Both the position numbers and the translations under genes were made by a program. A stretch of 64,000 bases of DNA from NCBI RefSeq assembly GCF_000150275.1, contig NW_002060970.1, positions 22,197 through 86,196 on the forward strand. The letters run 5' to 3'. The notes under the pieces are model-generated. The model did no database searches, had not been told where the DNA came from, and saw only the letters and a program-made list of their open reading frames with translations. Source of the DNA: Trichoplax adhaerens (lineage: Eukaryota > Animalia > Placozoa). This document shows, piece by piece, positions 4,181 through 64,000 of the stretch. How positions within the stretch are numbered: position 1 is the stretch's first letter; every line of letters starts with the position of its first letter.

Positions 4181-7100
4181 ATGGCTCTTGTACATGCAAC
4201 AGTTAAGTTCTTACTCTTCATTTGGGCACCAATGGTAAGTTTCAAGTAAAATTGCAATTAGTACTATCTATATGCCTAGACTTTTAATAAAGTTTTAAAC
4301 TTTAATGCATACTTGGTAAATATGGATATGATTGAAAGTACTTGAAGGATTAATATTAGTAGCGCTGCTTCGAAACGAAACCAAAGTATCTTATTTTGAT
4401 TAAATTATATCTGCATTTCTGTCTCTTCTCAATTAGGTTTTTCATGGCCGTTTAGGTACTATTTTGTAATTAGCAGTGAATAAGAAAATTATTCTGACAT
4501 GACTTATTTTGTCATGGTATTTCTGATTTAATCATTCCACTTAGAATAAGTGGAATAATTATTTGAATTAATGTCATAGAACTTAAAAATGCTAACTTAA
4601 TTTCCAGGATTCGAAATTTACACACAAATTAATGTTAGGGTTTCGTTGTGTAACTTCAATATCATGTTCTCACTTTAATCTATTTTGATCTAATGGTTTC
4701 AATGCTGTAATATTTAGTCGCTTCTGATGCGGTTAATGGTACTTGTGATCCAGGTTGGCTACAATTCAGAGATAAATGTATTTCATTTTCCTCCAAAATG
4801 AACTATGAGAATGCGTTAAAGTATTGCCAAAACATCAAAAGTAGTTTGATGGAAATTGATAGTGTGGAAAAGGAATCGTTTGTTGCAAGTTCTGTTCCAG
4901 ACTCATCGAATGTCTACTGGTTAGGATTGATAGACTTGGTTGGTAATGATAGCATCAATGATCATGTATGGGTGCAAAGCAATCGTTCCGTCATTGCTAC
5001 TGGCTATCAAAACTGGGGGCTTTCTAACCCCGGAAAAGCCTCTCAACGTTGCGTAGTTTTACGCAATTCGCCGCCTTACCAATGGTATGATCGGAGTTGT
5101 GACGACACTTATTATGCTATCTGTGAAAAAAGTAAGTTAGTGTAATTAAATGCAATGAAGAAAGTACTAAAATTGTATCATCATTTCATTGTGATCCAAT
5201 GCAATTTGAGTACTATATTATATCAAATTTTCATTGCATATCAAGGTAGGTGATATGGTCTGTATTAACGCAAATTAATCGCCGATATATTATTTCATTA
5301 CTGCAACATCATTCTAACTCTAATTTTACTTGCGCAAAAGTATAAAATGAGGTTTACTGCACAGAATATGTTTCTTAAATGAAGGAGTTTGTACATTCCA
5401 TATTTTGCAAAGAAATTTTTACCCTGATTTATTGTTTCACTACTGCCATTTCCTTCTAGTCTTAATTTTACTAGTATAATAGTAGAGAAATCGGATTTAT
5501 TTCATATGTTGTAATCATCAATTTAAGGAGTTCATAAATAAGGTAGTTCGCAATTTGCAAATTGTCTGATTTCAAAAGTTGCCGTCAACTTATACTGTTG
5601 TATTTCATTACCGCAATATCATTCTAGCCACAATTGTACATGTATAACAGTAGAGAAATGAGGGTATGTTTTACGTGTTCTAATCCTCGAATGAAGGAGT
5701 TTGTACATTACATATTTCGCAAGAAAATATTTCATTTCGGTTTCTGAGAATTATATTATCTAATGTTTTATAGTAATAAAATATTTGAATACCAAATTGC
5801 TATAATTTACCAAGTTTAGGATAGTCAAAAAAAATGTGTATAAGATATCCTAAGAATATATAATTATGCTATTTATTCAATATCTGTAGTATGCTGACGG
5901 AGTAAGTGAATATATTGTATGCGTTATTATTTTAAGATTCGGTGAAAGATATTGTGGCTTCGTCAACGGTTGGATATCCAATGTCGTCGACTGCAGGTAT
6001 GTAACTGCTCAATACTTTTCATATGTACTTTGATGGCTTAACTAGGTAGAAACTTCGTTTGACAGCAATGGTATTAAAAGCTGAGTCTTGGTAAATATCG
6101 TAGATTTTACCTTATTGCGGCTAAATATAGTGCTTAAAACATTCTCAGCAAGAATTAAGAGGTCTATTGTGGACAAAATGTCGTACGATATTGAAAATTT
6201 TTTCCGTATATTGATTTTTCATTTTCAGTTTAATTTAGTATTCAAATGGTAAATATTAAATAGTATAACAGAGTATAAATTTTTACAACATTTTAAGCTA
6301 TCTTAGGCTTTAATTAGGATCTCAAAAGTTTCATAGGCAGTTTCTATGGTTCTATTAGTCTACAAATTAAAAATTAATTGCAGAGTTGCAGTATCAATCA
6401 TTTTCTTCTCTCATCTTTCATCGTAATCCCACCCACCGTCCCTTTAAACAAGCAGCACGGGGGTATTTATACTACTGTTAGATGACTGTCATTATGGGTT
6501 CATTTCAATAGGTCAGTATAACAATCTTACAGTACATTTTACCTTAAGATTTCTCCATGTAAAATGAATAGCTCTAAGGTAGTAATTTCTGCAGAGTACT
6601 GATTTTTTAAATAGTATTCATTATATCGCTAAGGGTGGCCACTAGACCTTTCAATTTTGATTTGATGTAATACTCTGATGAAATGGAATAAACATAAAAT
6701 CTTTATAGAGTTTTCTACACTACCATTTTGATTGTTACATTTTCTTATAACGGTTGTTATTGACAGAGTAAGCTTTGCTTGCATAAGCAAGCGATCCTTA
6801 GACGCACTATAATGGTTGATATATAATTGACCACAGTACTAAGGACATTGTACCGCGCTGTCGATATCTTACCGTACCTGCTAATCTTAACTTGGTATGT
6901 CCATCACCGTACATGAGTTATCATAATGTGCTTTGGACCATGAACTAATCTTAATATAGCATTTCATAGCATTTCATTCGTGAATGCATTATTAAAAAGT
7001 AGTATTCGACAAGCATAGCTGTGAATATAGTAGTGCCTGGCTATTACCGGGATATATATAATGTCGAATGGTAATACTATCTGCTAATTATTAACAAATG

Positions 7101-10100
7101 GGTACATTATCGTAAACCGTCAGCAAAGCGACGTGAGTTTGTACTAGTACCTAATAATATCAGTGCTAATTTCTACTTGAATTCCTATAATAGTAAATAC
7201 CGCTCGAAGTAATGTTTATAGCTCTAGGCATATATGGCACTCTTCATAAGTTAATGTTACAGTACTTCCTAAATTAACAACTAGATCATTTTTCACTTTA
7301 AAAAATTTTATGTCACTGAAAGCCAACGTTAATCTAACCAGTGCATAAATCTGTTATGTATAGTGATAGAGACTGAAATATTTAAAGCCTAAAATGTTGA
7401 TACTCGAATATTTACGAAAGTTTAAAAAGAGTCATAACACGCTTAACATTCCTTTTTTATGGCTATATTAAATATTTATAATAAATCTATTACTAGTATT
7501 ATCAGCAATGATTATTGTACGCCTAGGTTTCTTGTACAGGCAATATGTGTAAAATAAGAAACTGTATTACTACTTTAGAATGTAAATTTTTTGGTTAGTT
7601 ACCAAAATTCGGAAATGCAATATACCTTGTCCGTGTTATTGATTACATATAATTACTCATTCTCTACATTCCGCTAAACTCGAAAAAATATATAAATATA
7701 GTATCGTGCCTAAGCAAGTGTAGTGTATTTGGATTGTACTGTCACTGTAATCTACTCTTAAATATAGAAATTTTGTATTGCTATTAAATACAGACACATT
7801 TACAGTCTATTCGCTCTACATTAAAATATGGTTTACTACATTTAGTTATTACAGTCCTAGCTATTTTCTACAATCATCTGTTATTCAATAACCTGTTATG
7901 GTATATGTTGTATCTAATCCTACAATCATGTTCTCTGCATGTGTTCTAATGCCATAGCTATAAATACCGCCGTTTTCTACCTTAGATTTCTTTAGTTGCA
8001 TTATTAGCCACAGTTAGTATTTACACTTTACTCACGGCAGCTACCACGCTGATCTACCGTAATTATCACATTATACTTAACTACTATGTACAATAAAGTA
8101 TCCCTTTTCTCAGGCTCCTTGTGCAATTCTCTGCATGGTAACTAAAACCACATTATCTGACTCTTCGAACCCTCCATCACAGCAAGTTCTCTTTTAAGCT
8201 AATGTCTCTGTTAATGTGGGACATCTCTGCTGTAATAATAATTTGATTAATGCCTAAATACATCATTTAAAAACGATCTAATGAAGGAATTCGTTTATAA
8301 AAAATGGATAGGCTATAAGCTGTAAAAAATCATGCTGAGAAAACATAATTCCGTTACGAGTACTACACATTTTTTATTTATTTTTTCTAGCTTTCTGTAA
8401 TAACATCGTTGAATTGATATCAGAACTAAAAACATTGTTTGTTCATGTAATATATTAAATTATACTTCTACCATAAAGATATTTTTATAAGATAGCTCAA
8501 TAATGATTTCAATACTAATTCTAATGCTTAATACAAATATAGAGATTTCAAGATCACTTGGACCCAGTTGTGATATTGGATGGACCCAATATAATGACGT
8601 TTGCCTAAAATATGTAGCCATTTCTGCCAGTTTCGCAGTAGCTACCAGTTATTGTAAAAATGACGATAGCTATTTAGTTGAGATAAAAAATGAGAGTAAA
8701 CAATGCTTTCTTAAGAAATATATTCTACAAAGCGATACCACTTGGTGTGGCTTAAGGGATGTTGTAGGCGATGACAAGATGTCTAGTCATCGTTGGACTA
8801 AGAGCAATCTTTCGCTAGTTGATACTGGATATACAAAATGGAGTACTTTCAGTCCTGATTTACTATATCAGGAATGCGTCGCACTTGTGCCTGTATCACA
8901 AGAGTGGTTATGGTTCGATCGCACATGCTATCAGAATTATCATTTTATTTGCGAAAAAAGTAAGATATAAAAAAAACCAATATTGTTATTTGTATAGTTT
9001 TGTCACCATCGATGGTAGAAAAGTAATTTATCGATCATCAATGCCATTTTCACTAAATAGAATGTTATTATTCTATTTTCAATTACATATTCGTTAATGC
9101 TATTCAAATTATACTACTTGTCTATGCTTAAATAGTAAATTTAAGTGATGGATTGCTTTCAATTTTAGTATATCGGATTCATTATAAGCAGCTATCATTC
9201 ATTTTACCACTCGTTAGGGGACGTCTGATAATTGATTGATAAAGCACTATTTTTTTTCTTTTCTTCTTTTATGATATCTTACATTTATTGATGATCATTA
9301 CTAGCAATACAGATTCACTTTTGGGTAATTTAGTCTATAATTATCAAATGAAAGTTAGATATTAAGAGTTCTGTAAATGAGGGCTGATCACAGTTACTTT
9401 TTATCAACATGCGTCCTAAACAGAGGCATACACGCTGGGATCTTCCTCATACACTTGTGAAATAACATCAAGCATAAAGAATGAAGTATCAATCTCATCA
9501 ACATCTGAAGGTAAGACACGGCTATTTATCATTGTTTTCTTACTTGTATAATACAAGTATGATAGACATGAGCTACATATAATATTTGCTATCCTATAAG
9601 ACTAAAATCGTAAATCAAGTACCATAAAGACTTCTCTATCTCTCATGTTTCTTACTAATTTTATTAGACTTGTCTAGCGCTAGTTCCAAATATATGAAGT
9701 TAGTATTTGCTCCTTTGCTTAGCAAAATCCAAAATGTGGTAGTTCGTATAAGACTCAAAAAATTCTACAGACGTCTCTTCTTTAGGCATTGCTCTTAAAC
9801 TATCCGGCCTAGTATACGTTTTAATAGATAAGCATGGTGTAGCCAATTTCAGTTTACAGGGCTTTGCCAATATGTAGAAAACAGAATATGTTCTTAATTT
9901 TATACAAACACTGTTTATGAGCTCAAAATTGGATATGAATTCAAATATTGTAATCAGTTTATATTACCAGCTAGCTATAGAGAGATTATATGCTTATAAA
10001 TGTTATTAAGGCGCAAAGCTTATATAATAGTCAAATACTGAGTTTGACGACATCATAACATTATTACATTTCGCACATCCAAGGCACAGGTAACCCAAAA

Positions 10101-13100
10101 TAGTATCAACATTTTATTTACATGGCCTAATTTAATCTGTGCATTGGTAGTGGCATTCATTTTCACGATAAAGGGGAAAGTGAATTTAGGATATATGATT
10201 GAAATTTTATATCATGATAATAATTTTAAATTCTAACATTATAATTATTTGATGGTATAAGATATTTTATGCATTGCTTACGGTAATCAGTCACACACTA
10301 AAGGGAAAAATAAAGTTATAATAATGTATGTGAAGACAATAATAACAATTTCAATCGTTACATCATAATGCTAATTATAAATTTTAGCATTATTACGGTA
10401 TAATACGCACTCAATCTTCTAAAATTTTACCACGTCATGCAGTAAGTGGTTTTATTAATACTGGTAACTAAAATCACATAACGAATTAAGTGAAATCTTT
10501 AAACAGTAATGATAATTGAGAGAATGTGATAAATAAATTAGAAGTTAATTGGAAGCTTACGATAGGGATAGACTGGAAATTGAAAATACTTTAAAAATTA
10601 GATTTTAAACAGAAGGCTTAATGATTTCCATTAGAATTAAGTAGAATATAAGCAAAGCAGTTAAGTTAATAGAGATGCTTATGGATAAAGGATAGGCAGC
10701 TATAGCATAATATTCTTTAGAAAATTAAAAATTTTAGGTCTACTATATTGTGAGCATTTAAGTTGCATCACCGGCATTCAAAGGCGATACGCAAGACAAC
10801 CTAGAGTAATTTACTTAGAATAGCGCTTTGATTCTAATATGGCTTGCATTACTCTAGAAATTACTAAAACATCTAGCTATCAATATCGTATGCATTATCT
10901 TTATAATTCCCTAGTCTTAAATCAAATTCAATGCTGAAATATTTTAACGACAGATTGTGTGATCATTATGTTTGTAATCTGATGTAAATACAAACCATAC
11001 ATCTGGTTTTGCAGGAAAATAGGAGTAAAAAATTGTGAAATTTCTTACACGTTAGATTTGTCAATGTAGCTCACATTTAGCATGCACCGTATTAAATTTA
11101 TTTCATTTATAGATATTCGCATTAGCAGCAGCAACATAGCTGTGTCGGAACCCTCGTCTGATATTGGAAATACTTCAGTGAGTACCGATAATTCATTGAC
11201 GTCGATATCAAATCTGGAGGTGGATAGCGTTAGTTCCCCTTTAATCGCGAGCATTNNNNNNNNNNNNNNNNNNNNNNNNNNNNNNNNNNNNNNNNNNNNN
11301 NNNNNTTTCTCGTCTGATTATTTTAATGGGATACAACATCTGATAATATGCAAAGTAGCACCGTCCAGAAATTTAATTTAGGAATTCCTCAGCAAACACA
11401 AATAGGACTGGAGCCTCTTTATAGTTCTAAACAGTACGCCGTCTCCAGTAGTGCATATGATGATTCATCAATTGAAAATGAGTATCCTGCGTTTATGATT
11501 GAAGATGATGCAATTAACGCGTCTTTAATCTCCATCACTTCTGTCTCAGCAACGTTGCCTTATAGTAAAAATAACTGGATTGAATTTTTCAAGCCTAATT
11601 CTGTACTAGGAAGCTCCGCATTATCAACTTCCATATCAACGTCCAAGAACAATCCAAGTTGGATTAAATCTTCACTTGAGCACCATATCAATGCTTCAAA
11701 ATTAATGTTGCAGAGCATCGAAAGTGCTAACTTATTAACATCAAGTATTGTATTACCTTCCATTCATCCTATTTCTGCTACAACTGCATCGCAAGGGATT
11801 CAGATTGATAATATTTTGGATTATGTAAGTTGCTTGGAAAATATAACAACTTAAAATTTATTACCTACGGTTAAGAGCCCGATTTTTCTTTGTATGACAT
11901 GCTATTAGATTGTAATTTTTATATTATTCTGTATTGTAGACATTAGAATCAGTATTTTACTTCAATTGTTTTATTTTAATATCCATGCAGGCTAATATTG
12001 CTTATAGATTAAACTTTGGCATAATTTTTATCGATTGATCTAGATTTATAATGCAGAGAAGATCGATAGCGCTCACTGTAATTACATTGTTAATGCTGTT
12101 CGCCATCTAAGCACTGAACTTAGTGGAAATAAAGCTGAATCGTACATAGACGGATTGTCCATAATGAGCAACAAATTGATCTTAAATGATACCACTATAG
12201 ATATAAAACGAAATATTTTGGAGGTTAGTATGACCTAGAATCGATTATAGCTTAAAAGATAGGAGTTTTAGTCATTAATGAAGCAGTTATATTTTCCTAG
12301 ACTATTATTTATTTTATGGACACATTAAACGCCAAGTTTACCGGTACTGATGCTTCTAAGGTATATTATAAATAACTACGTTCACGATCAGAAAATCAAT
12401 CCGTAATAAAATAAGAGCTAGCGTTTATTACAACCTATTCTCGATATCAATTAAAAACTTGCTCGACTAACGTACATTTAAAATTTAAAGTTCCTAGTCA
12501 TAAGCGAATCATATAGTTCTCAAATATGTACATTAATATGAATTAATTTATATCTTATTGAAAGCTAGAAGATAATAATAATTGTATTCATATTCTAGAA
12601 TGCTTTGAAGGCTACAACTCAGATGAATATTATAAATGAAATCGGGAATAGAATTGCACTTACATTACCAGTAGGTGCTTCTTTTAGTGTATCTTACTGC
12701 AAGGAGGCTTGTAAGTATGCTAAAGAGTTAATTTATTGCTTTAGTAGAATACCTTAGACTATCGATGTAGAGTCATTTTACTAATACTATTTATTGTTAA
12801 TGATTGTAAATAAATAAGATAATTTATTACTTGATGTTGCTAGGTTCTAATCTTACTATTCAAGTTCAGAATGGAACAGAATTTCGAATGACAGGATACC
12901 GAGTAGTTTACAATTCATCTAGAACAGAAAAAGTTGCAATTCAGCTTTCTAATGGTGCTTTTAATTCAGGTAGACTCTACTATTTCTTTACTCGTACATA
13001 TATAATGAAACTTATTTCTATTCTTCCTAAGATTTCAGAGCTTAGAAATATCAACATTATAGCATGTTTATTACAATTTAATTCTCTCTTACCGTGCTAC

Positions 13101-16100
13101 GGTACACAATATCCTTTAAATAAAATGATATTTTAGGAGCTATTCTTTTTTTAGGCGGCCGAGTTGAAATAGTATCTGGAAAGTACGCCTTTCTAAATAA
13201 ACTACTTAATGATAACTCCAATCTACAGTAGGTTTCTTTTTCAGGGTAGCTTTAAATGGAATGATTAACACAGAATTAGATTATCGATAAGCGTGTAGCA
13301 TGGAATTTACTATTAGATATTACTGCTATAAAATAATGCTTAAAAACTCAGCCTCTCTATTGTTCTAAACTGCTAGAAAATCCCTTATGTCAGATATTGT
13401 CATTTGCAAAGTTAATCCTTTACCACCCATTGGCATCAGCGAATTTTTTACTTTTTCAACATCCAATCTTACTACTAAGGATAAAACTAACTCGGTAGGG
13501 TAAAGAAAAGCACTTTATCAGTCTTGCCTCTAAAGTTAATAGAAGAATTACTAAGATTAAAGTAATCGATTGATTTTGAATTTTGCGCAGATGGATTACA
13601 GTTATACTATTAAATGTGTCTACTGGAATATTGAGTCTAGGTGAGTTAAAATGACTTTTGGGAAGGCATTGCATAAATTCGGGAACTATTCTAATAGTAT
13701 CGTTAGTTTATCGGCAACTCTGAAATCTTACTTAAATTGAGCAGTCTTGCAGTGCTTGAGTTTTACAACCCTTTACGGTGAAAATATTATAAGCAAAATC
13801 AGCAAGAGTTATTTACAATATTGGGTAAAATCCGATCACGAAAATTTCAAAGTTGTAGAAAGTTAGAACTTTATTAGATCTAATACAAAGACTAGCTACA
13901 CACCGCTCTACTCTAGCCGAATACATCTACTGAATTACTTCTAGAAAGAATAATCAGATAATCTAATGTCTTGCTTTTATTTTCTCCATAGCCTTAGCAG
14001 CTACAATCTGTATAGCAGTATTCTACCATATTTTAAACATATTCACCTTATTATTAGTCACAATATTTTACTGCGAACCATCATTAATCCAATGTAAAAA
14101 TGATTACAGTATTTTTGCAGACATTATTATTCCTACTACTCAAATACATGATTTACAATTCTATTTCTACCTGTAACCTTATTATTAGCTCAACATCTTA
14201 CTGTATATCGTCCTCTGTACTCTAGCATGGAGTCTATCTTTACAGTCTATAATTATGGGCTACTAATTACATCATAAGATAAATGTAGAAAAAACACTAC
14301 CGTACATCATACTAAACATAGCTAATAGTCTACTTTCACAATAATAAGTTACTTTACAGATATACTGTACATTACAACATGTTAAATAAGCCTTATTCTC
14401 GAACTTGCCGTAAATATGATAGTAACATGCTACTCTAGATATTACAATGCCGTATTACATTTGATTGAAAGTAAAGTTTATAATATTTATAATGCCGGTC
14501 ATTTCAAGCAGCATTTCCCTCCTACCATATGAGATAGGCACTCCTTTCACCTATAGTAGCGATATCAGTATCTAATTTAAATGAGTAGAACTCCGAAACT
14601 ATCGATAATATGAATATAGAAATAGCTGTTAAAATTGAAAATAATTCTAATGGTATTAATAACGATTCTTCTTGTAAACTGTCATTACACGATCTGTTCT
14701 GTTGCATAGTTCTTGGTTGAGCGATGGCTGCAGGCTAGCATTGGCAAAGAAAGGGAACTACACTTGTGCATGCAATCATTTAACCCACTTTGCAATTTTA
14801 TTACAAGTTACGGAGGTAATTTTCCAATCGCTTACGTATTAAGCAACCCTTATTTTGAATTGAATACAGTACGTTGAGGTTATTTAAGCCAAAAGATACC
14901 TGCCTAAGGCATCATTTTTTATTGTTCCGGTTAATTGCAGATCGATATTCATAACGCAAGCTCGCTTTTACAAGAAATCAATTTGGTTGCGTATATAGGA
15001 TTAGGGATATCAATTGCTTCTATCGTCTTAACTTTGCTGATTTTTACATTATTAAGGTACCATGACGAAAAGCTAGTAGAATATATGTTTACGATTTTAA
15101 ATTATTTCGTAATCTTAAGTTATAATACAGAATTATGTTATTTTTGTATTTATCTACTACGAACAACAATCTGCTTCCAATTAAAATGCGGTATCGCTCA
15201 TAATCTTAATTTAATCGAGCTGTTATAATATTTTGTAGGCTAAATAGCGGAAGATTTACTATTCATAAAAACCTTTTACTAGCTATTTTGCTAAGTCAAA
15301 TATGCTTAGTTGCTAGTCCCAACGCCAATATAAATCCAGTAAGTATCGTCAATACGTATTTTACCTTATTTGTTCTATGTATATCTTAGCCAGGTGATCA
15401 TAGAATAACGTAAAAGCTTCCTAATTAAAGCGATATTATCCTCAAATTCGTACGCAGATATTTTGTAAGATTGCTGCGATTTGCCTGCATTTCTTTTGTT
15501 TCGCTTCGTTTTCATGGATGCTGGTAGAAGGCGTACATTTATATTTCATGATAATTGCGGTATTTAATCAGAAAACTAGAAGCCATTACTACTATATTGT
15601 TGGTTGGGGTAAGTTTAGTTTACCTAAGTTACTAGCTTATTAATGAAATCTAAGATTTATTATTGCCAATCGGAAAATTTATCATTCCGTTTTCGCAAAG
15701 TAATATAATTACTGCCTTTTATTTTTTATTTTTCATATGAAAGTCTCACTCTTGATATCGTTTACTGATGTAAATCGCACTTTTATATTTTTCGTATATT
15801 TTGTCACAGGAATGCCATTAGTTGTTGTAGGTTTCTCTGTATTAATAAGATTTGATGGCTATGGAGGTGATGAAAGGTAAGTATTCACGACACTTGGTGA
15901 ATTTTTAGCTGATTACCTAAGTTTTTTAATAGAGAGTAATTACAGATATAAAATGCGGTTGCATAGCCTTAATGAATGACTATAGCAGCATATTTAATGC
16001 AGCTGAGAATAATTTAATTTAATAAGATTACCTTTTGTAGATGTTGGCTGTCTACCAAAGATGGGCTAATTTGGGCCTTCGTGGGTCCTGTTATTGCTAT

Positions 16101-18408: not shown

Positions 18409-18544
18409 GTAAGTAATTTTAGTTTGTTCCGAGTAGAAACCCTAATCATTCTCCAACATTGATGATTAAGCTGAAGTTGAAGTACAAGCTGCAATTGTTT
18501 CAAAGCGATAATTTTGCTATTAAAATCACATAATTTTTATGCTT

Positions 18545-18594
18545 NNNNNNNNNNNNNNNNNNNNNNNNNNNNNNNNNNNNNNNNNNNNNNNNNN
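18545..18594. other. Assembly gap (50 N) near the 3' end of gene 1
   Basis: N run. Confidence 1.
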
Positions 18595-19246
18595 CTTCTC
18601 TGACAATAGCAGTATTAGATGGATTTTTGTTAAATATAGTTTGGATGGAGCAATTAAGGTATTTTGCTGCAGTATTTCACGAAGTATAATTAACGAAATA
18701 TCGTGTAATTTAAGTAAAATATAACTGTAGTTTCGATATGAAAACACATAAAAGTGCGATACATAAGGTACTCTAGATTATATTGTGGAGATTATGAGAA
18801 AAAAGTAGTTAGGTAGGTAAGGACAGCTACTGCACCAGGCTGCTTGTAAGTTTCAAGTAAGAACATATAAATAGTTTACGGAGAGTTTTTATCATACTGC
18901 TCCATTATTAAGGTCTTTTGAAATTGTTTACTCAAGCTAAAGATAATTTATTAGTTATGAATGGAGTACGATACCAGCCAGCTTAAGTGAAATCAGTAAA
19001 AGAAGCTTAAGACTATAAAGTTGCTGCTGTCTACCGAAAATTATAATATTTTCTTGTAAATGTAATATAGTCTATTCTTAGTAAAGTTAATTTCCACATA
19101 GACTGTGACATAACTCGTTATTTGTATAATCTATATTTAACTATTCCTACTATGGAAATCCCCTATACTCTAGTTTGATTGTATCGTAGAATTACCTTAA
19201 TATAGAATCAAGGTATTCTTATTAGTCATTCGTATTTTATAAATTA

Positions 19247-19842
19247 CTAGTATAAATTCACGTCGCTTTGCTGACGGTTTACGATAATGTACCCATTTAT
19301 TAATAATTAACAGATAGTATAACCATTCTACATTATTTATATCCCGGTAATAGCCAGGCACTACTATATTCACCGCTATGCTTGTAGAATACTACTTTTC
19401 AATAATGCATTCACGGATGAAATGCTATATTAAGATTAGTTCATGGTCCAAAGCACATTATGATAACTAATGTACGATGATGGACATACCAACTTAAGAT
19501 TAGCAGGTACAGTATTAAGATATCTACAGTGCGGTACAATGTCCTTACTACTGTGGTCAATTCTATACCAATCATTATAATGTGTCTAAGGATCGCTTGA
19601 GTATGCAAGCAAAGCTTGCTCTGTCGATAGCAACCGTTACAAGAAAATGTAACAATCAAAATGGCTGTGTAGAAAACTCTATTAAGATTCCATGTTTATT
19701 CAATTTTCATCAGAACATTACATGAAATCAAAACTTAAAGGCTTAGTGGCCACCCTTAGCGATATAACGAATACTATTTTATAAATCAGTACTCTACAGA
19801 AATAACTACCGTGCTGCTCGTTTAAAGGGTGGGTGAGTGCGA
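19247..19842 (-). mobile_element. Non-autonomous Helitron copy 3 (inverted, about 120-bp internal deletion)
   Basis: The reverse complement reads A|TCGCACTCACCC...hairpin...CTAG|T. Confidence 0.87.
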
Positions 19843-55300: not shown

Positions 55301-58300
55301 TCTTTGTTTTAGTAACATACTAGATTTAAGCAAACATCAACTTCTAATATATCATATATTTATGAATACGACATACAGCTAATTGTAAAGTTACCAATTT
55401 TCTGCTATTTAATTTCATTTAATAGCANNNNNNNNNNNNNNNNNNNNNNNNNNNNNNNNNNNNNNNNNNNNNNNNNNTATTGCACATAAGTTTTGGCAGA
55501 TATGAAAAACCTTTATGCCATAGAAAATCTTAGAAAAGTACTAAGAAAAATCAAAACAGAATAGTAAAATTTCATGAATACCTTACCTAACTTATTGCAA
55601 ATATCATCACTTAAAACATACAGTACTTAGCACGACAATAAAGTTCTATGATTATTATTATATTGTATAAAGCTGAAATCAGTATACTCAGGATATCAGT
55701 AACATTACTTATCTGTGCTTATTGCTGTTAACAGCTCAAGATTTGGCATTATTTTTTAGCTATATCTAGTTTACTTCTTCACAAAATGTTAACAACAATA
55801 ACTTATACTTATTTGACAGCTTCACTACAGCCAATAATTCCTTTCCGAAATTTTTACTTTGAAGTAATAATGCCAAAGGTTTTTAGCAAGCTTATTACCT
55901 TATCATAGTAGTATGCTGATCTTAATAAATGCATCAATATCTTCTTCACTAGATAAAACTTACAAAATTTAGCAATGAATACTTATACATACAAAATATG
56001 CATCGTAAAATTCACGAATATAACGATATCTATAAATGTTTTTTCCATAATTTTCCAAAATTAAATCTCGATAACAGTTTAATAATCATGCACTCCACCA
56101 TATAAAAGTTTTAGAAATTTTCAGCGGACAAAGATGGCTTATAGCATAGTTAGTAAGCAATATTATAATTTTGATTAATTCGTTGAGTAGTCCTAATCGG
56201 AAACTATTACAAGAAGGAAGCAGCAATGGAAAATTTCATTAACGTACTTTCAGGGCTATGGTTGTTTAAATATATAATTAGACGCGCTTTTTACTAGCCC
56301 CACTTTCAATCCCAAAATTCAGTACCGAGCACTAAATCATCAACAACTTTCATAGTACAATTAAAAAAAAGAGATTAACTACCACTGCTAGAAAAATTAA
56401 GACACTTAGATATAACCAGTATCGAAGAAAATTTGATTGCTTTTTAGTCTGGCTTATATCTTCACTTTGCGCTATTAATTGACTGTTGTATAACTAAAGT
56501 AGTTGTACTGATAAAGTAATCGGTCTCAATCTGATGTACCTTTGATTTCATATGATAATTTCAAGTAAACTAAATTCGAGGGATTATAAAATTATTAGCT
56601 TGGCTTTATAAGAACAGATCGCTTGTTTTACTGTATATTAATTAAATTTGGCATGATAAAACAAAATAATCAATTGACATTATTTTAAATCTCTATAATA
56701 GCTACTGAAAATTATACACCTCTTGCGTGAGATTTAAAGCGGATATCTATATCAAAATAAGCTTACTTTAAATTTAATGCAGGATCTGAGCCTTGCCCAA
56801 GCGATTGGTACTTTTATGGCCCAGAAAATGTTTGTTTACACTTGGTTGACAAGAACGCTAAATTTCACATTGCTAAGAAAACCTGCTGGAATAATTTTAC
56901 CGCAGGGCTCTTATACATCGATAGTGCTAAGAAGGAAAACTTCATTAAGACTAACATTATTGTCAATAAGCATACGTTTTATTGGCTTGGATTAAAAGAC
57001 CTTGTTGGTGATGATAAACTAGAATCTCACCGATGGCTAGCTTCGAATAAAACCTTGGCGGAAAGCAATTATATAAATTTGGCAAATAATAGACCACCCA
57101 GGATAGATGCATATAAATGTATTATCATATATTTTCGACGGACGCCTGAATGGCGGGAAGAAAGATGCGGTAGTAAAAATAAATTCATCTGCGAAAAAGG
57201 TTTAGAAACAAAGTTAATCAATCTGCATTTAAATACAAATGAAGAGCAAATGCCTTCCTAAACCGATTCAAGATATAGGCCGAGCTGTTTTTTATCCGTT
57301 TCATTCCTAAATTCAGCCATTTCACGATAATTTATTTGTTAAAGTTGTTTAAAATGTGCTAAGTTATTTTCTTTAGCTTTATTCTTTGTCAAACACAAGA
57401 CAAATTTTACGTAGTAATCACACCGCTTAGTTCTAATACAATTGCAGTAACGGTAATAAATTTATTAAGTCTAGTAATACCAATTTATAAGACTTCTTCT
57501 TGTAAAATATATTGACAGAGCATTGAATAATTTTTCTCTTTGCTTAGCTGCAAGTTCTTCAGCAATGGTATCCGCAACAAAAAGTTCCTTGGGTATGTAT
57601 TTTGAATAAATTTCTTGCAGCTTACTATTTATTATAGTGATTTTCTATTCAAATTTTCTAAATATCATGGTATTGAATGAATTGCGGCATTTCATTCAGC
57701 TATGATCTCATCCTCAGAAGGACGATATAGTAAACATGTTAAATGATGCGATTACTCTTACATGTAAACATTAATTTCACGAATACAAAATTAACGTGCG
57801 TAATGATCGAAATTATTTATTCATTAGTTAGTTCTAAGTTTATGCCTTTCCTAGCAGCGATATAAGATATAGACTGTAAATTCTTCTAACATGAGTATAG
57901 CATGATTAACCAATATTTATTACTGCTATTGGAACCCAAACCTGTTATCAACTATAACAGCGTTTAATTTTCAACTTTATAATTAAATCTCAAAGCTATG
58001 TTCATATTAAAGTTAGCTGCACAGTAATTTATCTTGGTAGAAGATTTAAATCAGCTTATAAATAGTAGTAAGCAATCCCAATATTATATTATGTTGCAAG
58101 AAAAATGTTTGTCCATGCAATACATACGCTAATGTTACTTTATTTCTTATGCTGTGTTAAAGTATGATATTTACTGTGGCTATTTCTTAACAGTTGATTA
58201 TGAAATTACCTCTTTGCAAAAAATAGCATCATGTACGATTATTAGGCCAGAATGAATACTCATAAATTAGAAAAAGGACATTCATAGAACTATGAAAACA

Positions 58301-61300
58301 ACACTAAAAAATGATAGCTTGGCTGGGTATAATGACATTTTAAAATAAATATACTACAATTTTTACAATTTATGGATACTACGTAACATCAGTCCAATGA
58401 TGTTAAGCAGCTTGTATAATAAAGACAGTCAGTACGATTATTACGCTAAGGTAGATAAAATTATATTCGCAAGTCACTAATTATAGTCACCAATTCTAGT
58501 CATCAATTCTAGTCATCAATTCTAGTCTTGAGTATTTCATAAGGCAGTTAATGTTGTTAATTATAAATTGTTTAGATTACAATTTCAATAGTGATAGCTG
58601 CTTGGTACGGTGTATAAGTTATAGTGACCATTAGTAGTTTGTAATCCATATACAAGGGTCTGCATGATGATAAATATACAGTTTCTGCCGAATATTTTGC
58701 GATTAATAATAAAATGATACCAATCAAACCCTCCTGTTATATCATAATAAAGATTACTATCTTACTGATAGATTACTGTACCTCGGGACTTGAATATCTA
58801 TTATATTATAATTACCTTACTGACTATAATTATTTCTTACTAGTCGTATCTCAAATGATTCAGCCTTCAATGATGATATCGTGTATAGTCCATGTAGACC
58901 ATACACATACATATTAATAAATACTAATAACTACCTATAATTCAGTTGTGAATCTATAAGTCTGTGTTTCACAACTTTGCTAAATGTATAAGTAACTAAT
59001 TTTGCTCCTGCTGTATCCGCTCTACCGTAATATACCGTTGCTAATAAGCGTCACTGACTAGACTAGTTCAGTATATGACCTTATTCAGCAGTGAGTATAT
59101 CCAGACAACTTCATAAATCATCTTTATTTGAACGATAGAATATACTACTAGAAAATGTAATATGAGAACTCATTCTATGATTAAAGGCTCCCTCTTATAT
59201 ACCTGTGCCGATTTCCGTCGGTGTAAATTAATACATAATTCTATTTACAACATACTCGATTTTGTATAAATATATTTATGATAATTAGTATAGAATAAAT
59301 ATATGCTAATTAATATTGAGTGCTTACTACTCTTGCTCCAATTAAGAAATCAACTAGACTTGTTAACTAACAACTCACAGTTACAAGTGTGACAATCTCT
59401 ATTACACATTATACTCTTATTTAATGATTTAAATCGTCAGAGTCGCTAATGGAAATCCATAAAAGATTTAACATATTACAACTCTACTTTAGATAAAAAT
59501 ATGAATAAATATTTATTTATTAACAGTAATGGTGAACCGTAACACTGTGATAGTATAAGTCTTGCAAACATAACTAAACATATACTTGTAATTAGTGATA
59601 AATTTGCGATACTAACGAAAACCCATCATTTGCACTTAATGACACTAAGGGAATTTCACAGTCTACAGCTTTTGAAATTGAGAGCTTGTCATCACTTACG
59701 GCTATTCAAGATAATAGATTATCATCACCTATAGCTATTGGAGATAGTAGATTATCATCAAATACAGGCATTAAATATGGCAAATTATCATCATCTACAG
59801 CAATAAAAAATAATAAACTGTCACCTGATATAGCTGCTGAAGATAACAGATTATCATCATCTACACCTGTTGGATATGATAGATTATCATCAGGCACAAC
59901 CATTAAAGATGGTAGATCATTATCATCTATAGCTTTGGAAGATTATAAATTATTACTATCTACAGTCTTTAAAACCACATGGCTATCAGCATCTACAGCT
60001 ACTAAAGCTAATAGATTATCACCAGATACAGCTATTAATAGTAACAGATTATCCCCATCCACCACCATTGAAGCTGATAAGCTATCTTCATTTACACTTT
60101 CTGAAGACAATATATTACCACTATCCTTAGCCATTAAAGATACTGAGCTACCTTCATGAAATAGCGTAATATTGTCATTAGGTAAAATCATGCAAAATTT
60201 TTATCAGTTTTCGAATTTATATGCTTTTTTTCTATTATAAATAGCATCAATTAAGACATGTAAGTTACCGATTTAATTTCTGAAAGGAAGATTGTAGAAA
60301 AATAATCTATAATGATCATTTCTAATTTTAGCAATGCCCTACATCTTTAGTGGCTTCATGATATATATAACTACCTCTTTATACATGCAGTAAATTAGCT
60401 CATGCAAGAAACTTCTGAATGAAGGATAGTTAATAATATATTACTAACATTACAACTACTACTTATTTCGACATAAGATGGAGAAAGATTGATGGCCTTA
60501 TAGCCCTTCTCCTGGAGGTTATAAGCAAATGCGATTATGCAGACTATTTATACGTTGCATATTAAGAATTTGAAGCATCAGTTTCAAAATTGCTATTCTT
60601 AACCACTGTTCACGGTCTTTACAACTATTATATATAATCAAAAAGCTTTATTATCGATACAAAATTTGATATTAAGAAGCTTTAAATCGCATACATTAGT
60701 TCCAATATTTGACTTTAATTAAAATCACATTAAATATAGCATAAAATATGACCTTTAATTTAGGCAGATAGTTAGATGACCGTGCGACCAGTGACCATAA
60801 GTAGAGGGGCTGCGAAAATTATATTAATAACTCGTGAAAAAATGACGGATTCAATAGTGGATAAAGAATATGATTTGCTATTTTTTTTAATTTGCTTCAT
60901 TTCTTTATAGCACCACCTTTAGAATCTCAAGTAACCATATTGTCCAAATATTCCAAGACATCGCCTTCTGAATCATCTAGTGCAAACCTTTTCGCTACAG
61001 GTGAGAGAGTATGTGAAAATTGACGAAACTTTTTATTTTGGATTTATGTTGCTAGTACTAAATACAAAGATACGTTTTGTAAACGAATTTCCCTGAATAT
61101 TATGATGTACGATGAACCTCTAGACCAAAATTTAGCAAATTTCATGCACTATTTATCCTATAAATTCAAGATAGATCTGCTCAATCGAATCTTTTGAGTC
61201 ACTTTCTATAACTACTTTATTTGATTGTACTGAATATTAATAATATCTTCTCATATAACAATACCGGCCAATGTTATTTGGTAAAATGCAATCTATTGTA

Positions 61301-63667
61301 GAAGTATTTGTTTAGGACGAAACAACAACTCAAAAGATGTAAAAGTGGCAGCATAATCATGTTTAACACAAAAATTTTCTAGAATGAAATAGTTGTAGAA
61401 GTATACTTTTAAATATACCATTTACAGTTGTATATTAAAGATAAACACGCATAGACCTTTACACACAAAATTTTAGAAGCTTTATCATAAAGACTAACAA
61501 TATCTAGTTAATTTTTTATCGCATATTTCCTTCAGAGTCCTTAGGATTTTCAATTTCTACTCATACAGAATTAGCTCAAGAATCGAATACTTTGCTCACA
61601 GGTACAAAATATCAAGTAGAGAACTAATAATTTAGATACATAATCTGCTTTCAGAATTCGATTTATCTAATTACACTTTTAATTGTCTCTGATACTTTTA
61701 AAAATCTACTGGTGTTACTACTATAAAATTTGGCACGTTATTGATAGGTAATGACTTATCAAATGATACTTGCCCTGAACGATCTTAACTGTTGTTTTAA
61801 TTTGAAATAAATAAAATTTAATTAAGTTGAAACTATTCATATTTACAGATTCAACAACTTTATTGGACTTAAAAGGTAGTTTTACTGCCTTGTTGATCGA
61901 TTTCAGCACTTCAAAAACAGGTATATTTACTTTTCTATTACCTATATCATTTACTAGGCTGCAATTCTTTAATAAACGGAAATTATGAAGTTATAAGTCG
62001 TAAAATATTTGTCTAAAAGTTTATAATCGCTCTTTCGCCGATTACTTTCTTAGAAGTAAATATTTGCTACCAACGAAATTAAGCATTTATCTTTCTAAAT
62101 TAGAAAAGTTTTTTAATGTTATGATCAAATTTACGATTAAATATGAGAAATAAATTGATCTGGTTTATATAATTTTTTGTCAAGATATGCAAGATATTTA
62201 TCAGTTCTTCACTACTGACAACAAATCGACCATCGCAAAATACACTGCAACCTCAGATGTACAAGAAAAAGTAAATACCAATTTGTATAGCTCTGGAAGT
62301 ACATTCACATTTGATTACAACAAGAAAAGCCTCTCTTCCAGAATTGAACCAAATATCTATTTAACTACCGTTGACGATATTGAGTCAGCTTCCTCGTTCT
62401 CTCAGCTATATTCTAGCTGTTATCAGCCGTCCATAAGCCACTGGCCTACATTTTCGTCACAATCTATCTTGAATAGTAATCAGAATATCAATACAAATGC
62501 AGATAGACTCAATAGTGTTTCCTTCAAATCCTTAGCCGGTAAGCCATAGAACTTCGTAAAGTAATAAACTAGTGGAACCATTTAATGTAGTTACGATGTT
62601 AGCATTGTTATCGATTCATGTTACAGTGTTATGCACTGTAATATCGAGATTATAGTAGAAACATCTATGACAGGATAATTTTGTTGATTTACCCTTATAT
62701 GAACGGTTTCTAATTTAGATAAGTGATATTTAAGTATAGCATTAGTTTTTATGGTGATATATACAGCCTACTGAAATTAATAGTTTAATTAGGAAATCGA
62801 GAATAATCTTTTTAAAATTCAAGTCACCGTGATTGAGATTTAATTATGGTAGATTGTATATTATCGTAGAAATGTTCCGTGATTGGACATATTGTAATTT
62901 GACAATTTTGTATTAGTCATTCGATGTCTATGTTCGTAAATACTGTTGTCTTCATTAGGTAGCAGTAGATAAAATTAGCTTTAGATTCACTATCAGATTT
63001 CAACATTAATATTACTAGCTAGAATGCCTTTGCTATTGTAAAAGAGTATATAAAAGCGATACATCGTATACTAAAGTTAGTTCTTATGATTATTGTTTAA
63101 CGTAAGATACGAGGCGTCTAAGTCTTTTTGTAGTCTACTGCTATAGGAAAACTGTTCCTGAAAGAGTAGATGTTGCTCCCTGATACGTGGTTTAGGGAAT
63201 CGACTGATTGATCATGCATTACGTTATCTTATTGCAAAGCTGTTTTGTAACTATTCATAAATAAGTAATCAATAATTTTTTTAATTAAATTGATTAAACT
63301 TGCCTAATATTCAACAGCGTCTACTGACATCGATGTAACTACGCATCAGATCCCCTTCCATCCTACACCTACAGACCAAGACATTACTTTTAATCCTTTC
63401 GAGGAGGTGCTATAATAGTTATCTCTAATACAAACACGATGAAATCTTTTACTATATTTGCATTTGTTATTATTTTAGTATTCTAAAGTTCCTATTGTAA
63501 CAGCAAATGATACACTCAGGGCATTAGCAAAAATTAATGAAGAACTAGCGATCCATCCAATTCTAACAGTTCAAACAGCAAAGATTTACGGTCAAGGTTT
63601 AAATCAACTTATATCCAAGCTTATCACAAATGCATCAAATACTGAATTAATTATAGCATTATCACAG
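52376..63667 (+). CDS. Gene 3 (5' part, runs off the window): C-type lectin, repeat/micro-exon stalk and start of GAIN; third adhesion GPCR paralog
   Basis: Exons: 52376-52432 (MKIRFKYFIPGVMWIYSIQ), 52603-52624, 56783-57199 (CTL), 57548-57592, 57700-57729, probably 58194-58232, 59669-60181 (11-aa repeats, in-frame TGA), 60911-61000, 61536-61601, 61849-61920, 62185-62538, 63318-63406 (phase 1-0), 63479-63667 (phase 0-0 helical exon equivalent to 12044-12223 and 38252-38434). Same 57-nt + 22-nt + CTL start as gene 2. The 7TM is not in the window, so GPCR identity is inferred from paralogy. Confidence 0.75.
53468..54652 (+). mobile_element. Solo-LTR-like family C copy 2 (contains B4)
   Basis: TGTTAC...GTGACA with perfect TSD AGGAC (53463-53467 / 54653-54657). 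Confidence 0.86.
53733..54282 (-). mobile_element. Solo-LTR-like family B copy 4 nested in C2
   Basis: TGTGAT...TTACA with perfect TSD AGGAC; other family C copies have a single site here. Confidence 0.87.
54715..55807. repeat. Diverged direct repeat of about 220 bp (about 54715-54940 vs 55585-55807) in gene 3 intron 2
   Basis: Shared blocks aataaa.ttctatgatta, aagctgaaatca..atact, tatatcta and tgtt.acaacaataa. Confidence 0.7.
55428..55477. other. Assembly gap (50 N)
   Basis: N run. Confidence 1.
56783..57199 (+). CDS. Gene 3 C-type lectin-like domain exon (degenerate sugar site, basic)
   Basis: CPSDWYFYGPENVC..AKKTC..YWLGLKDLVGDD..NNRPPR..KC..WREERC..FICEK. Confidence 0.92.
58472..58527. 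repeat. 13-bp tandem repeat (agtcatcaattct), about 4.3 copies
   Basis: Directly visible in the sequence. Confidence 0.88.
59686..60156 (+). repeat. Coding minisatellite: 14 copies of a 33-bp unit (11 aa, consensus about LSSSTAIKDNR)
   Basis: The ORF splits exactly into 14 units of 11 aa plus LPS; recurring agattatcatc at the DNA level. Confidence 0.9.
62619..63252 (+). mobile_element. Solo-LTR-like family C copy 4 (gene 3 intron)
   Basis: TGTTACAGTG...TTTTGTAACT with perfect TSD ATTCA; homologous to C1 and C2. Confidence 0.83.
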
Positions 63668-64000
63668 GTAAAATAAGTATTAGAATATGAGTGAAATTTA
63701 GTTTATTGCATCTTTAATAAAATTAGAATTAATTCTAAATTACGTACATTTTTTTAATTTCAATCTGAATGAATACTAAAATAAGTCTATGATCAAAACG
63801 GTGGAATCTGTCAGCCGCACAATTTCAGCTCAATCTGATAAGGTCTGCTAATAGCTTAGTTTTCGTAATAGTGAATTTTTACCGTGTAAATATTGTGTAA
63901 TATTCTAAATTTTGCATTTTAATTTAATTTGTTAAGGTCAATAATTTAAATAACTATCTCAATGATGCAGTATATGTGAATTGTAAAACAACCTATTTTT

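What the first reader, a model, noticed from the sequence alone, without database searches (positions are those of the whole stretch)
4181..64000. Tandem array of C-type-lectin-tipped adhesion GPCRs: conserved signalling end, variable recognition end
Seen: three co-oriented paralogs share the same signal-peptide exon / 19-22-nt micro-exon / CTL exon start. Genes 1 and 2 have an intact GPS and a clearly similar 7TM, while the stalks are unalignable and lectin number differs (2, 1, 1). Established: CTL domains bind glycans; GAIN/GPS with a tethered agonist is the adhesion-GPCR activation module; the 7TM motifs (IHKNL, WMLVEG.HLY, CWLS..G.IWAF, FHCL.NSEVR) resemble ADGRD1/GPR133, whose vertebrate ectodomain is a pentraxin domain rather than a CTL. 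Inference: a lineage-expanded family of glycan-sensing GPCRs, possibly for recognising microbes, food or self in a simple animal. The ORF track shows only fragments, so automated annotation could split the lectins from the receptors.
Basis: partly seen in the sequence, partly recalled or inferred. Interest (0 to 1): 0.85.

Follow-up and report, generated by a model that had tools for sequence, protein, structure and literature searches.

The report
Lectin-headed adhesion GPCR gene array
The window holds three neighbouring Trichoplax genes for adhesion-type G-protein-coupled receptors that carry C-type-lectin-like heads; the genes are real, but the family was already published in 2019, so this is confirmation with some added detail.

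Summary
The window is Trichoplax adhaerens scaffold DNA. It holds three co-oriented paralogues, each built as C-type-lectin-like domain(s), a serine-rich stalk, GAIN/GPS and a 7TM.

- **Gene 1 (4181-18412+)** has two lectin exons. RNA contigs give a GT..AG junction chain from the exon after lectin 1 through the stalk and GPS exon into TM1.
- **Gene 2 (28533-43679)** matches a complete 1589-aa Trichoplax sp. H2 protein at 99.3% identity.
- **Gene 3** starts at 56783 and ends about 5.9 kb beyond the window.
- **Gap 1** lies inside a stalk exon. The frameshift next to it is an assembly error: all four runs add an A after 11324.
- **Gaps 2 and 3** probably hide coding exons.

The family is already published. 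Kamm et al. 2019 found that 28 of 36 lectin-domain receptors of Trichoplax sp. H2 are secretin/adhesion GPCRs. This scan also met the family about 62 kb beyond the window's end (s1-749471).

Four things are added here.
- One RNA contig skips the lectin-2 exon in frame.
- The stalk exon of gene 1 exists in strongly divergent versions.
- The classical Ca2+/sugar-binding residues are incomplete in all four lectin domains, so glycan sensing is unproven.
- Lectin-headed adhesion GPCRs also occur in crinoids and corals.

The 7TM is as close to ADGRL as to ADGRD.

The parts
4181..4234 (+). Gene 1, first coding exon (start codon, hydrophobic signal-peptide-like 18 residues), phase 0 end
   Evidence: Matches residues 1-18 of TRIADDRAFT_61845 and RDD36399.1 at 100%; donor gtaagt
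4437..4455 (+). Gene 1, 19-nt micro-exon
   Evidence: Encodes the six residues between the signal exon and the lectin exon in both database models; AG/GT flanks
4718..5131 (+). Gene 1, C-type-lectin-like domain 1, one 414-nt phase 1-1 exon
   Evidence: Pfam Lectin_C 2.7e-19; 98% to TRIADDRAFT_61845
5937..5996 (+). Gene 1, 60-nt linker exon, phase 1-1
   Evidence: In both database models. Its 3' end is seen in RNA contig X9 joined directly to 9424
8543..8959 (+). Gene 1, C-type-lectin-like domain 2, one 417-nt phase 1-1 exon; skipped in at least one RNA contig
   Evidence: Pfam Lectin_C 7.2e-11; 96.5% to RDD36399.1. Skipping: the loose end at 9421 in X9 matches the linker exon's 3' end
9424..9510 (+). 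Gene 1, 87-nt stalk exon
   Evidence: RNA joint 9510/11113 with GT..AG in X9, X12 and X10
11113..11824 (+). Gene 1, large Ser-rich stalk exon interrupted by assembly gap 11256-11305; one base (A) missing after 11324
   Evidence: RNA contigs cover both sides and bridge the gap. 'Put in behind 11324: A' in 4 of 4 runs. Two divergent continuations appear at 11203 and 11255. H2 orthologues have about 55-135 residues where the window has 50 N
12044..13640 (+). Gene 1, seven exons of the GAIN region (12044-12223, 12301-12360, 12599-12710, 12844-12969, 13155-13227, 13377-13494, 13591-13640)
   Evidence: GT..AG joints in RNA contigs X9/X10/X12. In the AF2 model of the H2 orthologue this part is a helical bundle followed by a beta sandwich, matching GAIN crystal structures
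14710..14815 (+). Gene 1, GPS exon with H-L|T site and tethered-agonist-like strand
   Evidence: Read directly. Pfam GPS 4.4e-13 in RDD36399.1. RNA joint 13640/14710, and a loose end that continues into 14941
14941..17262 (+). Gene 1, nine 7TM exons (14941-15056, 15239-15338, 15458-15608, 15810-15876, 16041-16107, 16536-16633, 16807-16933, 17221-17262)
   Evidence: Pfam 7tm_2 on single exons; 92-100% to the H2 orthologue P0152; splice sites
17509..18412 (+). Gene 1, cytoplasmic tail exons (17509-17568, 17709-17760, 18356-18412); the last coding exon is not found and is probably in gap 18545-18594
28533..28946 (+). Gene 2, C-type-lectin-like domain exon, phase-1 start
   Evidence: Pfam Lectin_C 1.6e-17; 99% to TRIADDRAFT_61847 and to RDD37692.1
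29071..38132 (+). Gene 2, stalk of about 20 mostly 3n-length exons; gap 36978-37174 probably hides about 34 residues
   Evidence: Collinear mapping of RDD37692.1 at 99.3% identity; missing residues 737-770
38252..40243 (+). Gene 2, GAIN region and GPS exon (40144-40243)
   Evidence: Pfam GPS 4.3e-10 on the exon; mapping
40730..43679 (+). Gene 2, 7TM exons (40730-43083) and tail exons
   Evidence: Pfam 7tm_2 on exons and 9.3e-50 on the H2 orthologue; same exon lengths as gene 1
56783..57200 (+). Gene 3, C-type-lectin-like domain exon, phase-1 start
   Evidence: Pfam Lectin_C 4.1e-11
59650..64000 (+). Gene 3, stalk and first GAIN exons; the gene runs on to window-equivalent 69925 (GPS 65884-65989, 7TM 66134-68814)
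   Evidence: RDD37689.1 maps collinearly at 99.4% over the window plus L002; Pfam GPS and 7tm_2 on that protein. The link of the lectin exon to 59650 was not tested

Best explanation
Three tandem paralogues of the placozoan family of adhesion (class B2) GPCRs whose ectodomain is headed by C-type-lectin-like domains. Each gene encodes an N-terminal head of one or two such domains and a long, disordered, serine-rich stalk built from many symmetric exons. After the stalk come a GAIN domain with a canonical GPS (H-L|T), a 7TM of the ADGRD/ADGRL type and a cytoplasmic tail.

Inferred mechanism: the head binds an external ligand, which may be a glycan or a protein and is not decided. Ligand binding or pull on the stalk displaces the N-terminal fragment at the GPS. 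The exposed T-H-F-A-I/L-L strand then acts as tethered agonist on the 7TM, which couples to G proteins and/or arrestin-mediated uptake.

Shown: domain content, gene continuity for gene 1, intact frames, family expansion and tandem origin. Inferred: GPS cleavage, tethered agonism, ligand class and cellular role.
For: - Pfam on single exons finds Lectin_C four times, plus GPS and 7tm_2.
- The organism and split v1 models were identified.
- H2 orthologues carry Lectin_C+GPS+7tm_2 in one protein: RDD36399.1 and RDD37692.1. They map collinearly at 95-100% and 99.3%.
- RNA contigs give a GT..AG junction chain from the linker exon to TM1 of gene 1, and they correct the frameshift.
- The AF2 model of the gene 1 orthologue shows a disordered stalk, then a five-helix bundle, a beta sandwich and seven TM helices.
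- Foldseek matches CD97 (4.9e-19), ADGRD1 (35% identity), ADGRL3 and GAIN crystal structures 4dlq, 4dlo and 8oek.
- PDB sequence search gives ADGRD1 1.2e-57 and ADGRL3 5.8e-57.
- The GPS/agonist motif is conserved in all three genes.
- 32 co-oriented lectin-7TM pairs exist genome-wide.
- The window genes form a clade (SH-aLRT 96) inside a placozoan clade (97).
- The family is published and reported as expressed in defined secretory metacells.
Against: - Pfam's GAIN model does not score on the placozoan proteins. GAIN rests on a model with moderate confidence (pLDDT 60-90 in that part) built from the H2 orthologue, not from the window's own joined sequence.
- The link between lectin and 7TM is transcript-supported only for gene 1. 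It rests on a gene model for gene 2 and is untested for gene 3.
- Signal peptides for genes 2 and 3 were not found.
- Ca2+/sugar ligands are incomplete in all four lectin domains.
- Three assembly gaps fall in or next to coding sequence.
- No biochemical evidence exists for cleavage or signalling.
Confidence: 0.87

Rival explanations
1. The lectin exons and the GPS/7TM exons are separate genes: secreted lectins lying upstream of headless adhesion GPCRs, as the T. adhaerens v1 annotation has it.
For: TRIADDRAFT_61845 (187 aa) and TRIADDRAFT_61847 (271 aa) are lectin-only models. The H2 models of genes 1 and 3 are 'partial'.
Against: RNA contigs splice the linker exon after lectin 1 through the stalk to the GPS and TM1 exons of gene 1. 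The H2 model of gene 2 is one 1589-aa protein. All ectodomain exons are phase 1-1 with no stop. Genome-wide there are 32 co-oriented pairs against 0 on the opposite strand.
Confidence: 0.03
2. The proteins are mainly endocytic scavenger or pattern-recognition receptors, as Kamm et al. proposed. The 7TM then serves arrestin-driven uptake rather than tethered-agonist G-protein signalling, and the head may bind non-glycan ligands.
For: Kamm et al. 2019 propose this and report an expanded arrestin family. Canonical sugar-binding residues are incomplete. The nearest solved lectin-like domains include PLA2R and mannose-receptor family members, which are endocytic.
Against: The GPS H-L|T and the agonist-like strand are strictly conserved in all paralogues examined. 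The 7TM keeps the motifs of signalling-competent ADGRD/ADGRL receptors. The two roles do not exclude each other.
Confidence: 0.3
3. One or more of the three copies is a decaying pseudogene in T. adhaerens. Candidates for lesions are the frameshift at gap 1, missing exons at gaps 2 and 3, and an unlinked lectin exon in gene 3.
For: The window sequence has a frameshift after 11324 and lacks orthologue residues at gaps 2 and 3. No signal peptide was found for genes 2 and 3.
Against: All four runs restore the missing A. Mapped exons are 99.3-99.4% identical to the H2 orthologues and have no stops. Gene 1 is transcribed and spliced. The missing pieces coincide exactly with N runs.
Confidence: 0.07

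Closest known systems
Placozoan CTLD-bearing secretin/adhesion GPCRs (Kamm et al. 2019, BMC Genomics 20:5, PMC6321704)
   Same: Same organism group, same domain combination and same family. Their count is 28 in Trichoplax sp. H2; the positional estimate here is at least 32 in T. adhaerens. The H2 orthologues of the window genes are such proteins.
   Different: The paper treats them as scavenger receptors at repertoire level. The passages found in it mention no gene structure, tandem arrays, isoforms, Ca2+-site analysis or GAIN fold. Its statement that the combination is essentially unique to Placozoa is outdated.
Vertebrate ADGRD1/ADGRD2 (GPR133/GPR144)
   Same: Best 7TM similarity: 35-36% identity to ADGRD2, ADGRD1 top in the PDB sequence search, and highest identity in the fold search. 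GPS and agonist strand are of the same type.
   Different: The ectodomain has no pentraxin/LamG domain (Pfam). The tree does not resolve a specific D relationship. ADGRL3 scores almost equally.
Latrophilins (ADGRL1-3, C. elegans LAT-1)
   Same: A lectin-type head on a GAIN-7TM chassis with a glycosylated stalk. The 7TM similarity nearly equals that to ADGRD. NCBI auto-names of the H2 proteins include 'latrophilin-like'.
   Different: The latrophilin head is a rhamnose-binding (Gal_Lectin) domain plus olfactomedin and HormR. Here it is a C-type-lectin-like domain with no HormR.
Lectin_C + GPS + 7tm_2 proteins of crinoids (Antedon, Anneissia) and corals (Oculina, Acropora)
   Same: Same order of domains: signal peptide, one C-type lectin domain, GAIN/GPS, 7TM. 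The 7TM is 35-37% identical.
   Different: Short stalks (711-799 aa in total). The crinoid heads keep EPN. They do not group with the placozoan clade with support, so common origin versus independent shuffling stays open.

Membership tests
Adhesion GPCR (class B2) | Seven-helix 7tm_2 domain | tested here: met
   Pfam 7tm_2 on window exons and 9.3e-50 / 6.7e-51 on the H2 orthologues. Seven helices in the AF2 model. ADGRD1/ADGRL3/CD97 are the top fold hits.
Adhesion GPCR (class B2) | GPS motif with conserved Cys pattern and H-L|T/S cleavage triad directly before TM1 | tested here: met
   Pfam GPS on the gene 2 exon and on the orthologues. C-x-C-N-H-L-T-H-F-A is read in genes 1, 2 and 3.
Adhesion GPCR (class B2) | GAIN fold (helical subdomain A plus beta-sandwich subdomain B enclosing the GPS) | tested here: met
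   In the AF2 model of P0152, helices span 365-472 and strands 478-645. Foldseek hits GAIN crystal structures 4dlq, 4dlo and 8oek at E about 1e-10. Caveats: Pfam GAIN does not score, and the model is of the H2 orthologue.
Adhesion GPCR (class B2) | Autoproteolysis and tethered-agonist activation | not testable with these tools
   Only the sequence prerequisites are present.
ADGRD subfamily (GPR133/GPR144) | 7TM orthologous to ADGRD to the exclusion of other subfamilies | tested here: inconclusive
   ADGRD1 1.2e-57 against ADGRL3 5.8e-57. The quick tree gives a polytomy of the placozoan clade, ADGRD2, ADGRL1 and the crinoid proteins. The careful tree did not finish.
ADGRD subfamily (GPR133/GPR144) | Pentraxin/LamG-type ectodomain | tested here: not met
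   No PF00354/PF13385 on the placozoan proteins, while the ADGRD2 hits carry them.
C-type lectin-like domain (fold family) | Lectin_C profile, four conserved Cys, WIGL core | tested here: met
   Pfam scores of 43-70 bits against a cut-off of 22.6. Invariant C, W, G-L and C columns. PDB relatives.
Ca2+-dependent carbohydrate-binding C-type lectins | Ca2+ site 2 ligands: EPN or QPD, a Glu before the third Cys, and WND | tested here: not met
   At these positions the alignment columns read NPG/WYD, SPD/WFD, EPN/WRD and RPP/WRE. The motif definition is from established knowledge of MBP-A/DC-SIGN-type domains, not from a tool. Gene 2 keeps EPN only.
Placozoan CTLD-GPCR family (Kamm 2019) | CTLD and 7tm_2 in one polypeptide of a placozoan | tested here: met
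   RNA junction chain for gene 1. RDD36399.1 and RDD37692.1. For gene 3 only position and orientation support it.

The most novel reading that the evidence does not exclude
The ectodomain is a built-in diversification module. A lectin-domain cassette exon can be skipped, about 20 symmetric stalk exons could be varied by splicing, and a stalk exon exists in versions only about 63% identical while its neighbours are 95-100% identical. Together these could give each locus a variable set of receptor heights or heads. In addition, a lectin-headed D/L-type adhesion GPCR may be ancestral to animals rather than a placozoan invention, since the same architecture occurs in corals and crinoids.
Probability: 0.2. 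Interest if true: 0.6.

Novelty: already known. Interest (0 to 1): 0.3.

Why it matters
The receptor class matters because it joins a pattern-recognition-type head to a GPCR in an animal with no nerves and no adaptive immunity. It is also one of the largest receptor expansions in placozoans. That point is already in the literature.

What this check adds is practical.
- The reference T. adhaerens gene models for these loci are wrong (split), which affects domain censuses and single-cell atlases that use v1 identifiers.
- The glycan-binding assumption is weak on sequence grounds.
- The claim that the architecture is unique to placozoans no longer holds.
- Gene 1 shows in-frame skipping of a whole lectin domain, and it has unusually divergent stalk versions that deserve a proper long-read look.

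Tried and rejected
- **Signal-exon search.** An ab initio search for signal-peptide exon plus micro-exon upstream of genes 2 and 3 gave 36-40 candidates per gene with acceptable splice sites. I assigned none.
- **First exon of the H2 gene 2 model.** It maps to 24624-24746, 3.8 kb upstream, and is not signal-like. I take it for a prediction artefact.
- **Whole-protein search with P0151** was swamped by serine-rich words and gave only two hits. A region-restricted search worked.
- **MAFFT --auto** on whole proteins timed out, so 7TM segments were cut by BLASTP instead.
- **The careful IQ-TREE run** did not finish, and the quick tree was used.
- **HSP-based exon refinement** failed where HSPs ran through short introns and was replaced by k-mer diagonals.
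- **A wrong search string** printed a meaningless long translation. The exon start was fixed.
- **No joined spliced model was sent to any search tool.** Window exons were searched by reference. Whole-protein searches, folding and the tree used database proteins (H2 orthologues). Exons were joined only inside a script, to check frames.
- **Supplement of Kamm 2019.** It lists TrispH2 locus tags, not RDD accessions, so I could not confirm that these three genes are among their 28.

Full report
**Identity of the DNA.** The window is G000:C1387:22197-86196 of a 105.6-Mb, 1414-contig, roughly 30% G+C genome. Exact protein look-ups name it as Trichoplax adhaerens. The first lectin exon with its upstream exons is TRIADDRAFT_61845. 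The gene 2 lectin exon with five stalk exons is TRIADDRAFT_61847.

**Observation.** Stop-free frames on the + strand hold four Lectin_C domains. Their exons are:
- 4718-5131
- 8543-8959
- 28533-28946
- 56783-~57200

7tm_2 pieces lie at 15210-16939 and 40913-41372, and a GPS lies at 40070-40255. The own-genome scan shows no other Lectin_C exon in the window, so the counts 2, 1, 1 hold.

**One gene or two?** This was the stated refutation test.

*Database models.*
- Trichoplax sp. H2 proteins join the parts. RDD36399.1 (947 aa, partial) has signal peptide, two Lectin_C, stalk, GPS and TM1-2. It maps collinearly to 4181-15338.
- P0152 (963 aa, partial) carries stalk, GPS, the complete 7TM and the tail, and maps to 11321-18417.
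- RDD37692.1 (1589 aa, complete; Lectin_C 6e-17, GPS 1e-10, 7tm_2 9e-50) maps to 28535-43679 in 39 exons at 99.3% identity without stops.
- RDD37689.1 (959 aa, partial) maps to 59650-69925, which is 5.9 kb past the window end, at 99.4%.

*Reads.* I laid contigs of two runs on record as RNA (X9, X12), one RNA-like run (X10) and one DNA-like run (X1) on 8900-14899. The RNA runs cover exons only and give these GT..AG joints:
- 9510/11113
- 11824/12044
- 12360/12599
- 12710/12844
- 12969/13155
- 13227/13377
- 13494/13591
- 13640/14710

Loose ends supply 12223/12301 and the step from the GPS exon into the TM1 exon at 14941. One 1495-nt X10 contig runs from 12597 through the GPS exon and a further 830 nt downstream. 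Upstream, a 1330-nt X9 contig reaches 9424 from sequence that matches the 3' end of the linker exon 5937-5996.

So gene 1 is one transcription unit from the exon after lectin 1 into the 7TM. For gene 2 the link rests on the H2 model. For gene 3 it rests only on position, orientation and the genome-wide pattern.

**The gaps (asked to be tested first).**
- *Gap 1 (11256-11305)* lies inside a large Ser-rich exon (11113-11824). Frame across it is meaningless, because H2 orthologues have about 55 to 135 residues where the window has 50 N. Just after the gap the window is frameshifted relative to every orthologue. All four runs insert an A after 11324, at full depth, so this is an assembly error and not a lesion. 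Before the gap the window is identical to the RDD36399.1 version of the exon. After the gap it is 96.6% identical to P0153 but only 63.5% identical to RDD36399.1. Both continuations appear as loose ends in the same RNA run, X12. The gap therefore marks a switch between two divergent versions. Whether these are alleles or a collapsed partial duplication is open.
- *Gap 2 (18545-18594)* follows the donor at 18413. The last 21 residues of the orthologue are not found in the next 5 kb.
- *Gap 3 (36978-37174)* coincides with orthologue residues 737-770, which are absent from the flanks.
- *Gap 4* is upstream of gene 3 and uninformative.

**What the proteins are.** An AlphaFold2 model of P0152 was built with a 30-sequence alignment:
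- Residues 1-361 are disordered.
- Residues 365-472 form five helices.
- Residues 478-645 form a beta sandwich that ends in the post-GPS strand.
- Seven long helices follow.

Foldseek matches:
- inactive CD97, GAIN+7TM, at 4.9e-19
- ADGRD1 at 35% identity (TM-score 0.70 on the target)
- ADGRL3 and ADGRL2
- the GAIN crystal structures of latrophilin-1, BAI3 and BAI2

By sequence, ADGRD1 (1.2e-57) and ADGRL3 (5.8e-57) lead, followed by ADGRL2, ADGRL4 and ADGRE5, with ADGRF/G and calcitonin receptors far behind. The best non-placozoan database hits are bird ADGRD2 proteins at 35-36%. A quick maximum-likelihood tree of the GPS-7TM segment puts all placozoan sequences in one clade (97). The three window genes form a sub-clade (96). 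The whole sits in an unresolved group with ADGRD2, ADGRL1 and invertebrate receptors, apart from ADGRG.

**Tandem origin.** The three genes share exon lengths through the signalling end (gene 1 / gene 2 / gene 3):

| Exon | Gene 1 | Gene 2 | Gene 3 |
|---|---|---|---|
| GPS | 106 | 100 | 106 |
| TM1 | 116 | 110 | 110 |
| next | 100 | 100 | 100 |
| next | 151 | 151 | 151 |
| next | 67 | 67 | 67 |
| next | 67 | 67 | 85 |
| next | 98 | 104 | 104 |
| next | 127 | 127 | 127 |
| next | 42 | 42 | 42 |

The stalks, by contrast, give no BLASTP alignment.

Genome-wide I merged 86 7tm_2 exon hits into 63 loci. Of these, 32 have at least one Lectin_C exon within 15 kb upstream on the same strand, and none has one on the opposite strand. 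Those pairs account for 56 of the 89 Lectin_C exons, with one to six lectin exons per gene.

**Is the head a lectin?** The fold family is certain. At the positions that bind Ca2+ and sugar in classical C-type lectins (EPN or QPD, then WND; my knowledge of MBP-A/DC-SIGN-type domains), the four domains read as follows:

| Domain | Motif positions |
|---|---|
| Gene 1, lectin 1 | NPG / WYD |
| Gene 1, lectin 2 | SPD / WFD |
| Gene 2 | EPN / WRD |
| Gene 3 | RPP / WRE |

The closest solved relatives are PLA2R and mannose-receptor-family domains, snaclecs, lithostathine and CD23. Several of these bind proteins rather than sugars (from my own knowledge of these families, not from a tool). Glycan sensing is therefore possible but unsupported.

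**Isoform.** The lectin-2 exon is 417 nt, phase 1-1. The X9 contig joins 5996 directly to 9424, which keeps the frame and gives a one-lectin receptor. Low contig depth over 8900-8959 in X9 and X12 shows that inclusion also occurs. This is one contig in one run, so it is a lead and not a measured ratio.

**Prior knowledge.** Kamm et al. 2019 report that 28 of 36 CTLD receptors of Trichoplax sp. H2 are secretin/adhesion GPCRs. They call the combination unique apart from one amphioxus gene. Mayorova et al. 2025 mention CTLD-GPCRs expressed in astacin-positive secretory metacells of four placozoans. A follow-up in this scan, 62 kb beyond the window's end, reached the same filing. The uniqueness claim no longer holds. 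Lectin_C+GPS+7tm_2 proteins occur in the crinoids Antedon and Anneissia and in the coral Oculina. Acropora has one, with SEA and HormR domains in addition.

**Verdict.** Interest is modest. The leads worth keeping are the skipped lectin exon, the divergent stalk versions at gap 1, the degenerate sugar-binding sites, and the wider distribution of the architecture among animals.

Noticed in passing
window 13700-14500 (intron of gene 1); similar ORF-like copies at 285-470 (+), 13967-14173 (+), 45954-46154 (-), 53863-54063 (+): A very high-copy repeat. Contig depth in the DNA-like run X1 rises to 12,000-21,000, against about 100-180 around it. RNA runs also cover it. Many loose ends start at 13826 and 13829, suggesting an element terminus.
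   Followed up: partly
window 1736-1924 (+), 6632-6838 (-), 19444-19722 (both strands): A second dispersed repeat family with near-identical ORF-like translations, seen in the stop-to-stop frame list.
   Followed up: no
window 11113-11824 and 12132-13349: The stalk exon of gene 1 exists in at least two strongly divergent versions, about 63% identical at protein level, while neighbouring exons are 95-100% identical. Both are seen in RNA run X12. DNA-like contig depth is 163-180 over 12132-13349 against 71-89 over 8900-11157. Alleles or a collapsed partial tandem duplication would both fit. In H2, two partial models of this gene lie on one 26-kb contig.
   Followed up: partly
window 17221-17262: The 42-nt exon for the end of TM7 (G-L-S-I-F-V-F-H-C-L-F-N-S-E) has good splice sites in the window. 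It is missing from the H2 model P0152. Genes 2 and 3 keep the equivalent exon (43042-43083; window-equivalent 68773-68814).
   Followed up: partly
L002 / window-equivalent 68773-68814: The H2 model of gene 3 (RDD37689.1) repeats the 14-residue TM7-end segment twice in a row. The T. adhaerens DNA has one copy. Either an H2 exon duplication or an assembly/model artefact.
   Followed up: no
window 59602-60159: The long repeat-rich frame of gene 3 ends in a stop at 60157. The H2 orthologue leaves this exon at a donor at 60040, before the stop, so the stop need not interrupt the protein.
   Followed up: partly
window 24624-24746 and 45258-45438: The first and last exons of the H2 gene 2 model map 3.8 kb upstream and 1.6 kb downstream of the rest. 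They look unlike a signal peptide or a receptor tail, and are probably over-extensions of the prediction.
   Followed up: no
window 29071-36641: Eighteen consecutive stalk exons of gene 2 have lengths divisible by three (48-168 nt).
   Followed up: partly
G000:C1405:1.57-1.73 Mb and C1411:7.00-7.14 Mb: Larger arrays of the same family lie elsewhere in the genome. On C1405 single receptors are preceded by five or six Lectin_C exons.
   Followed up: no
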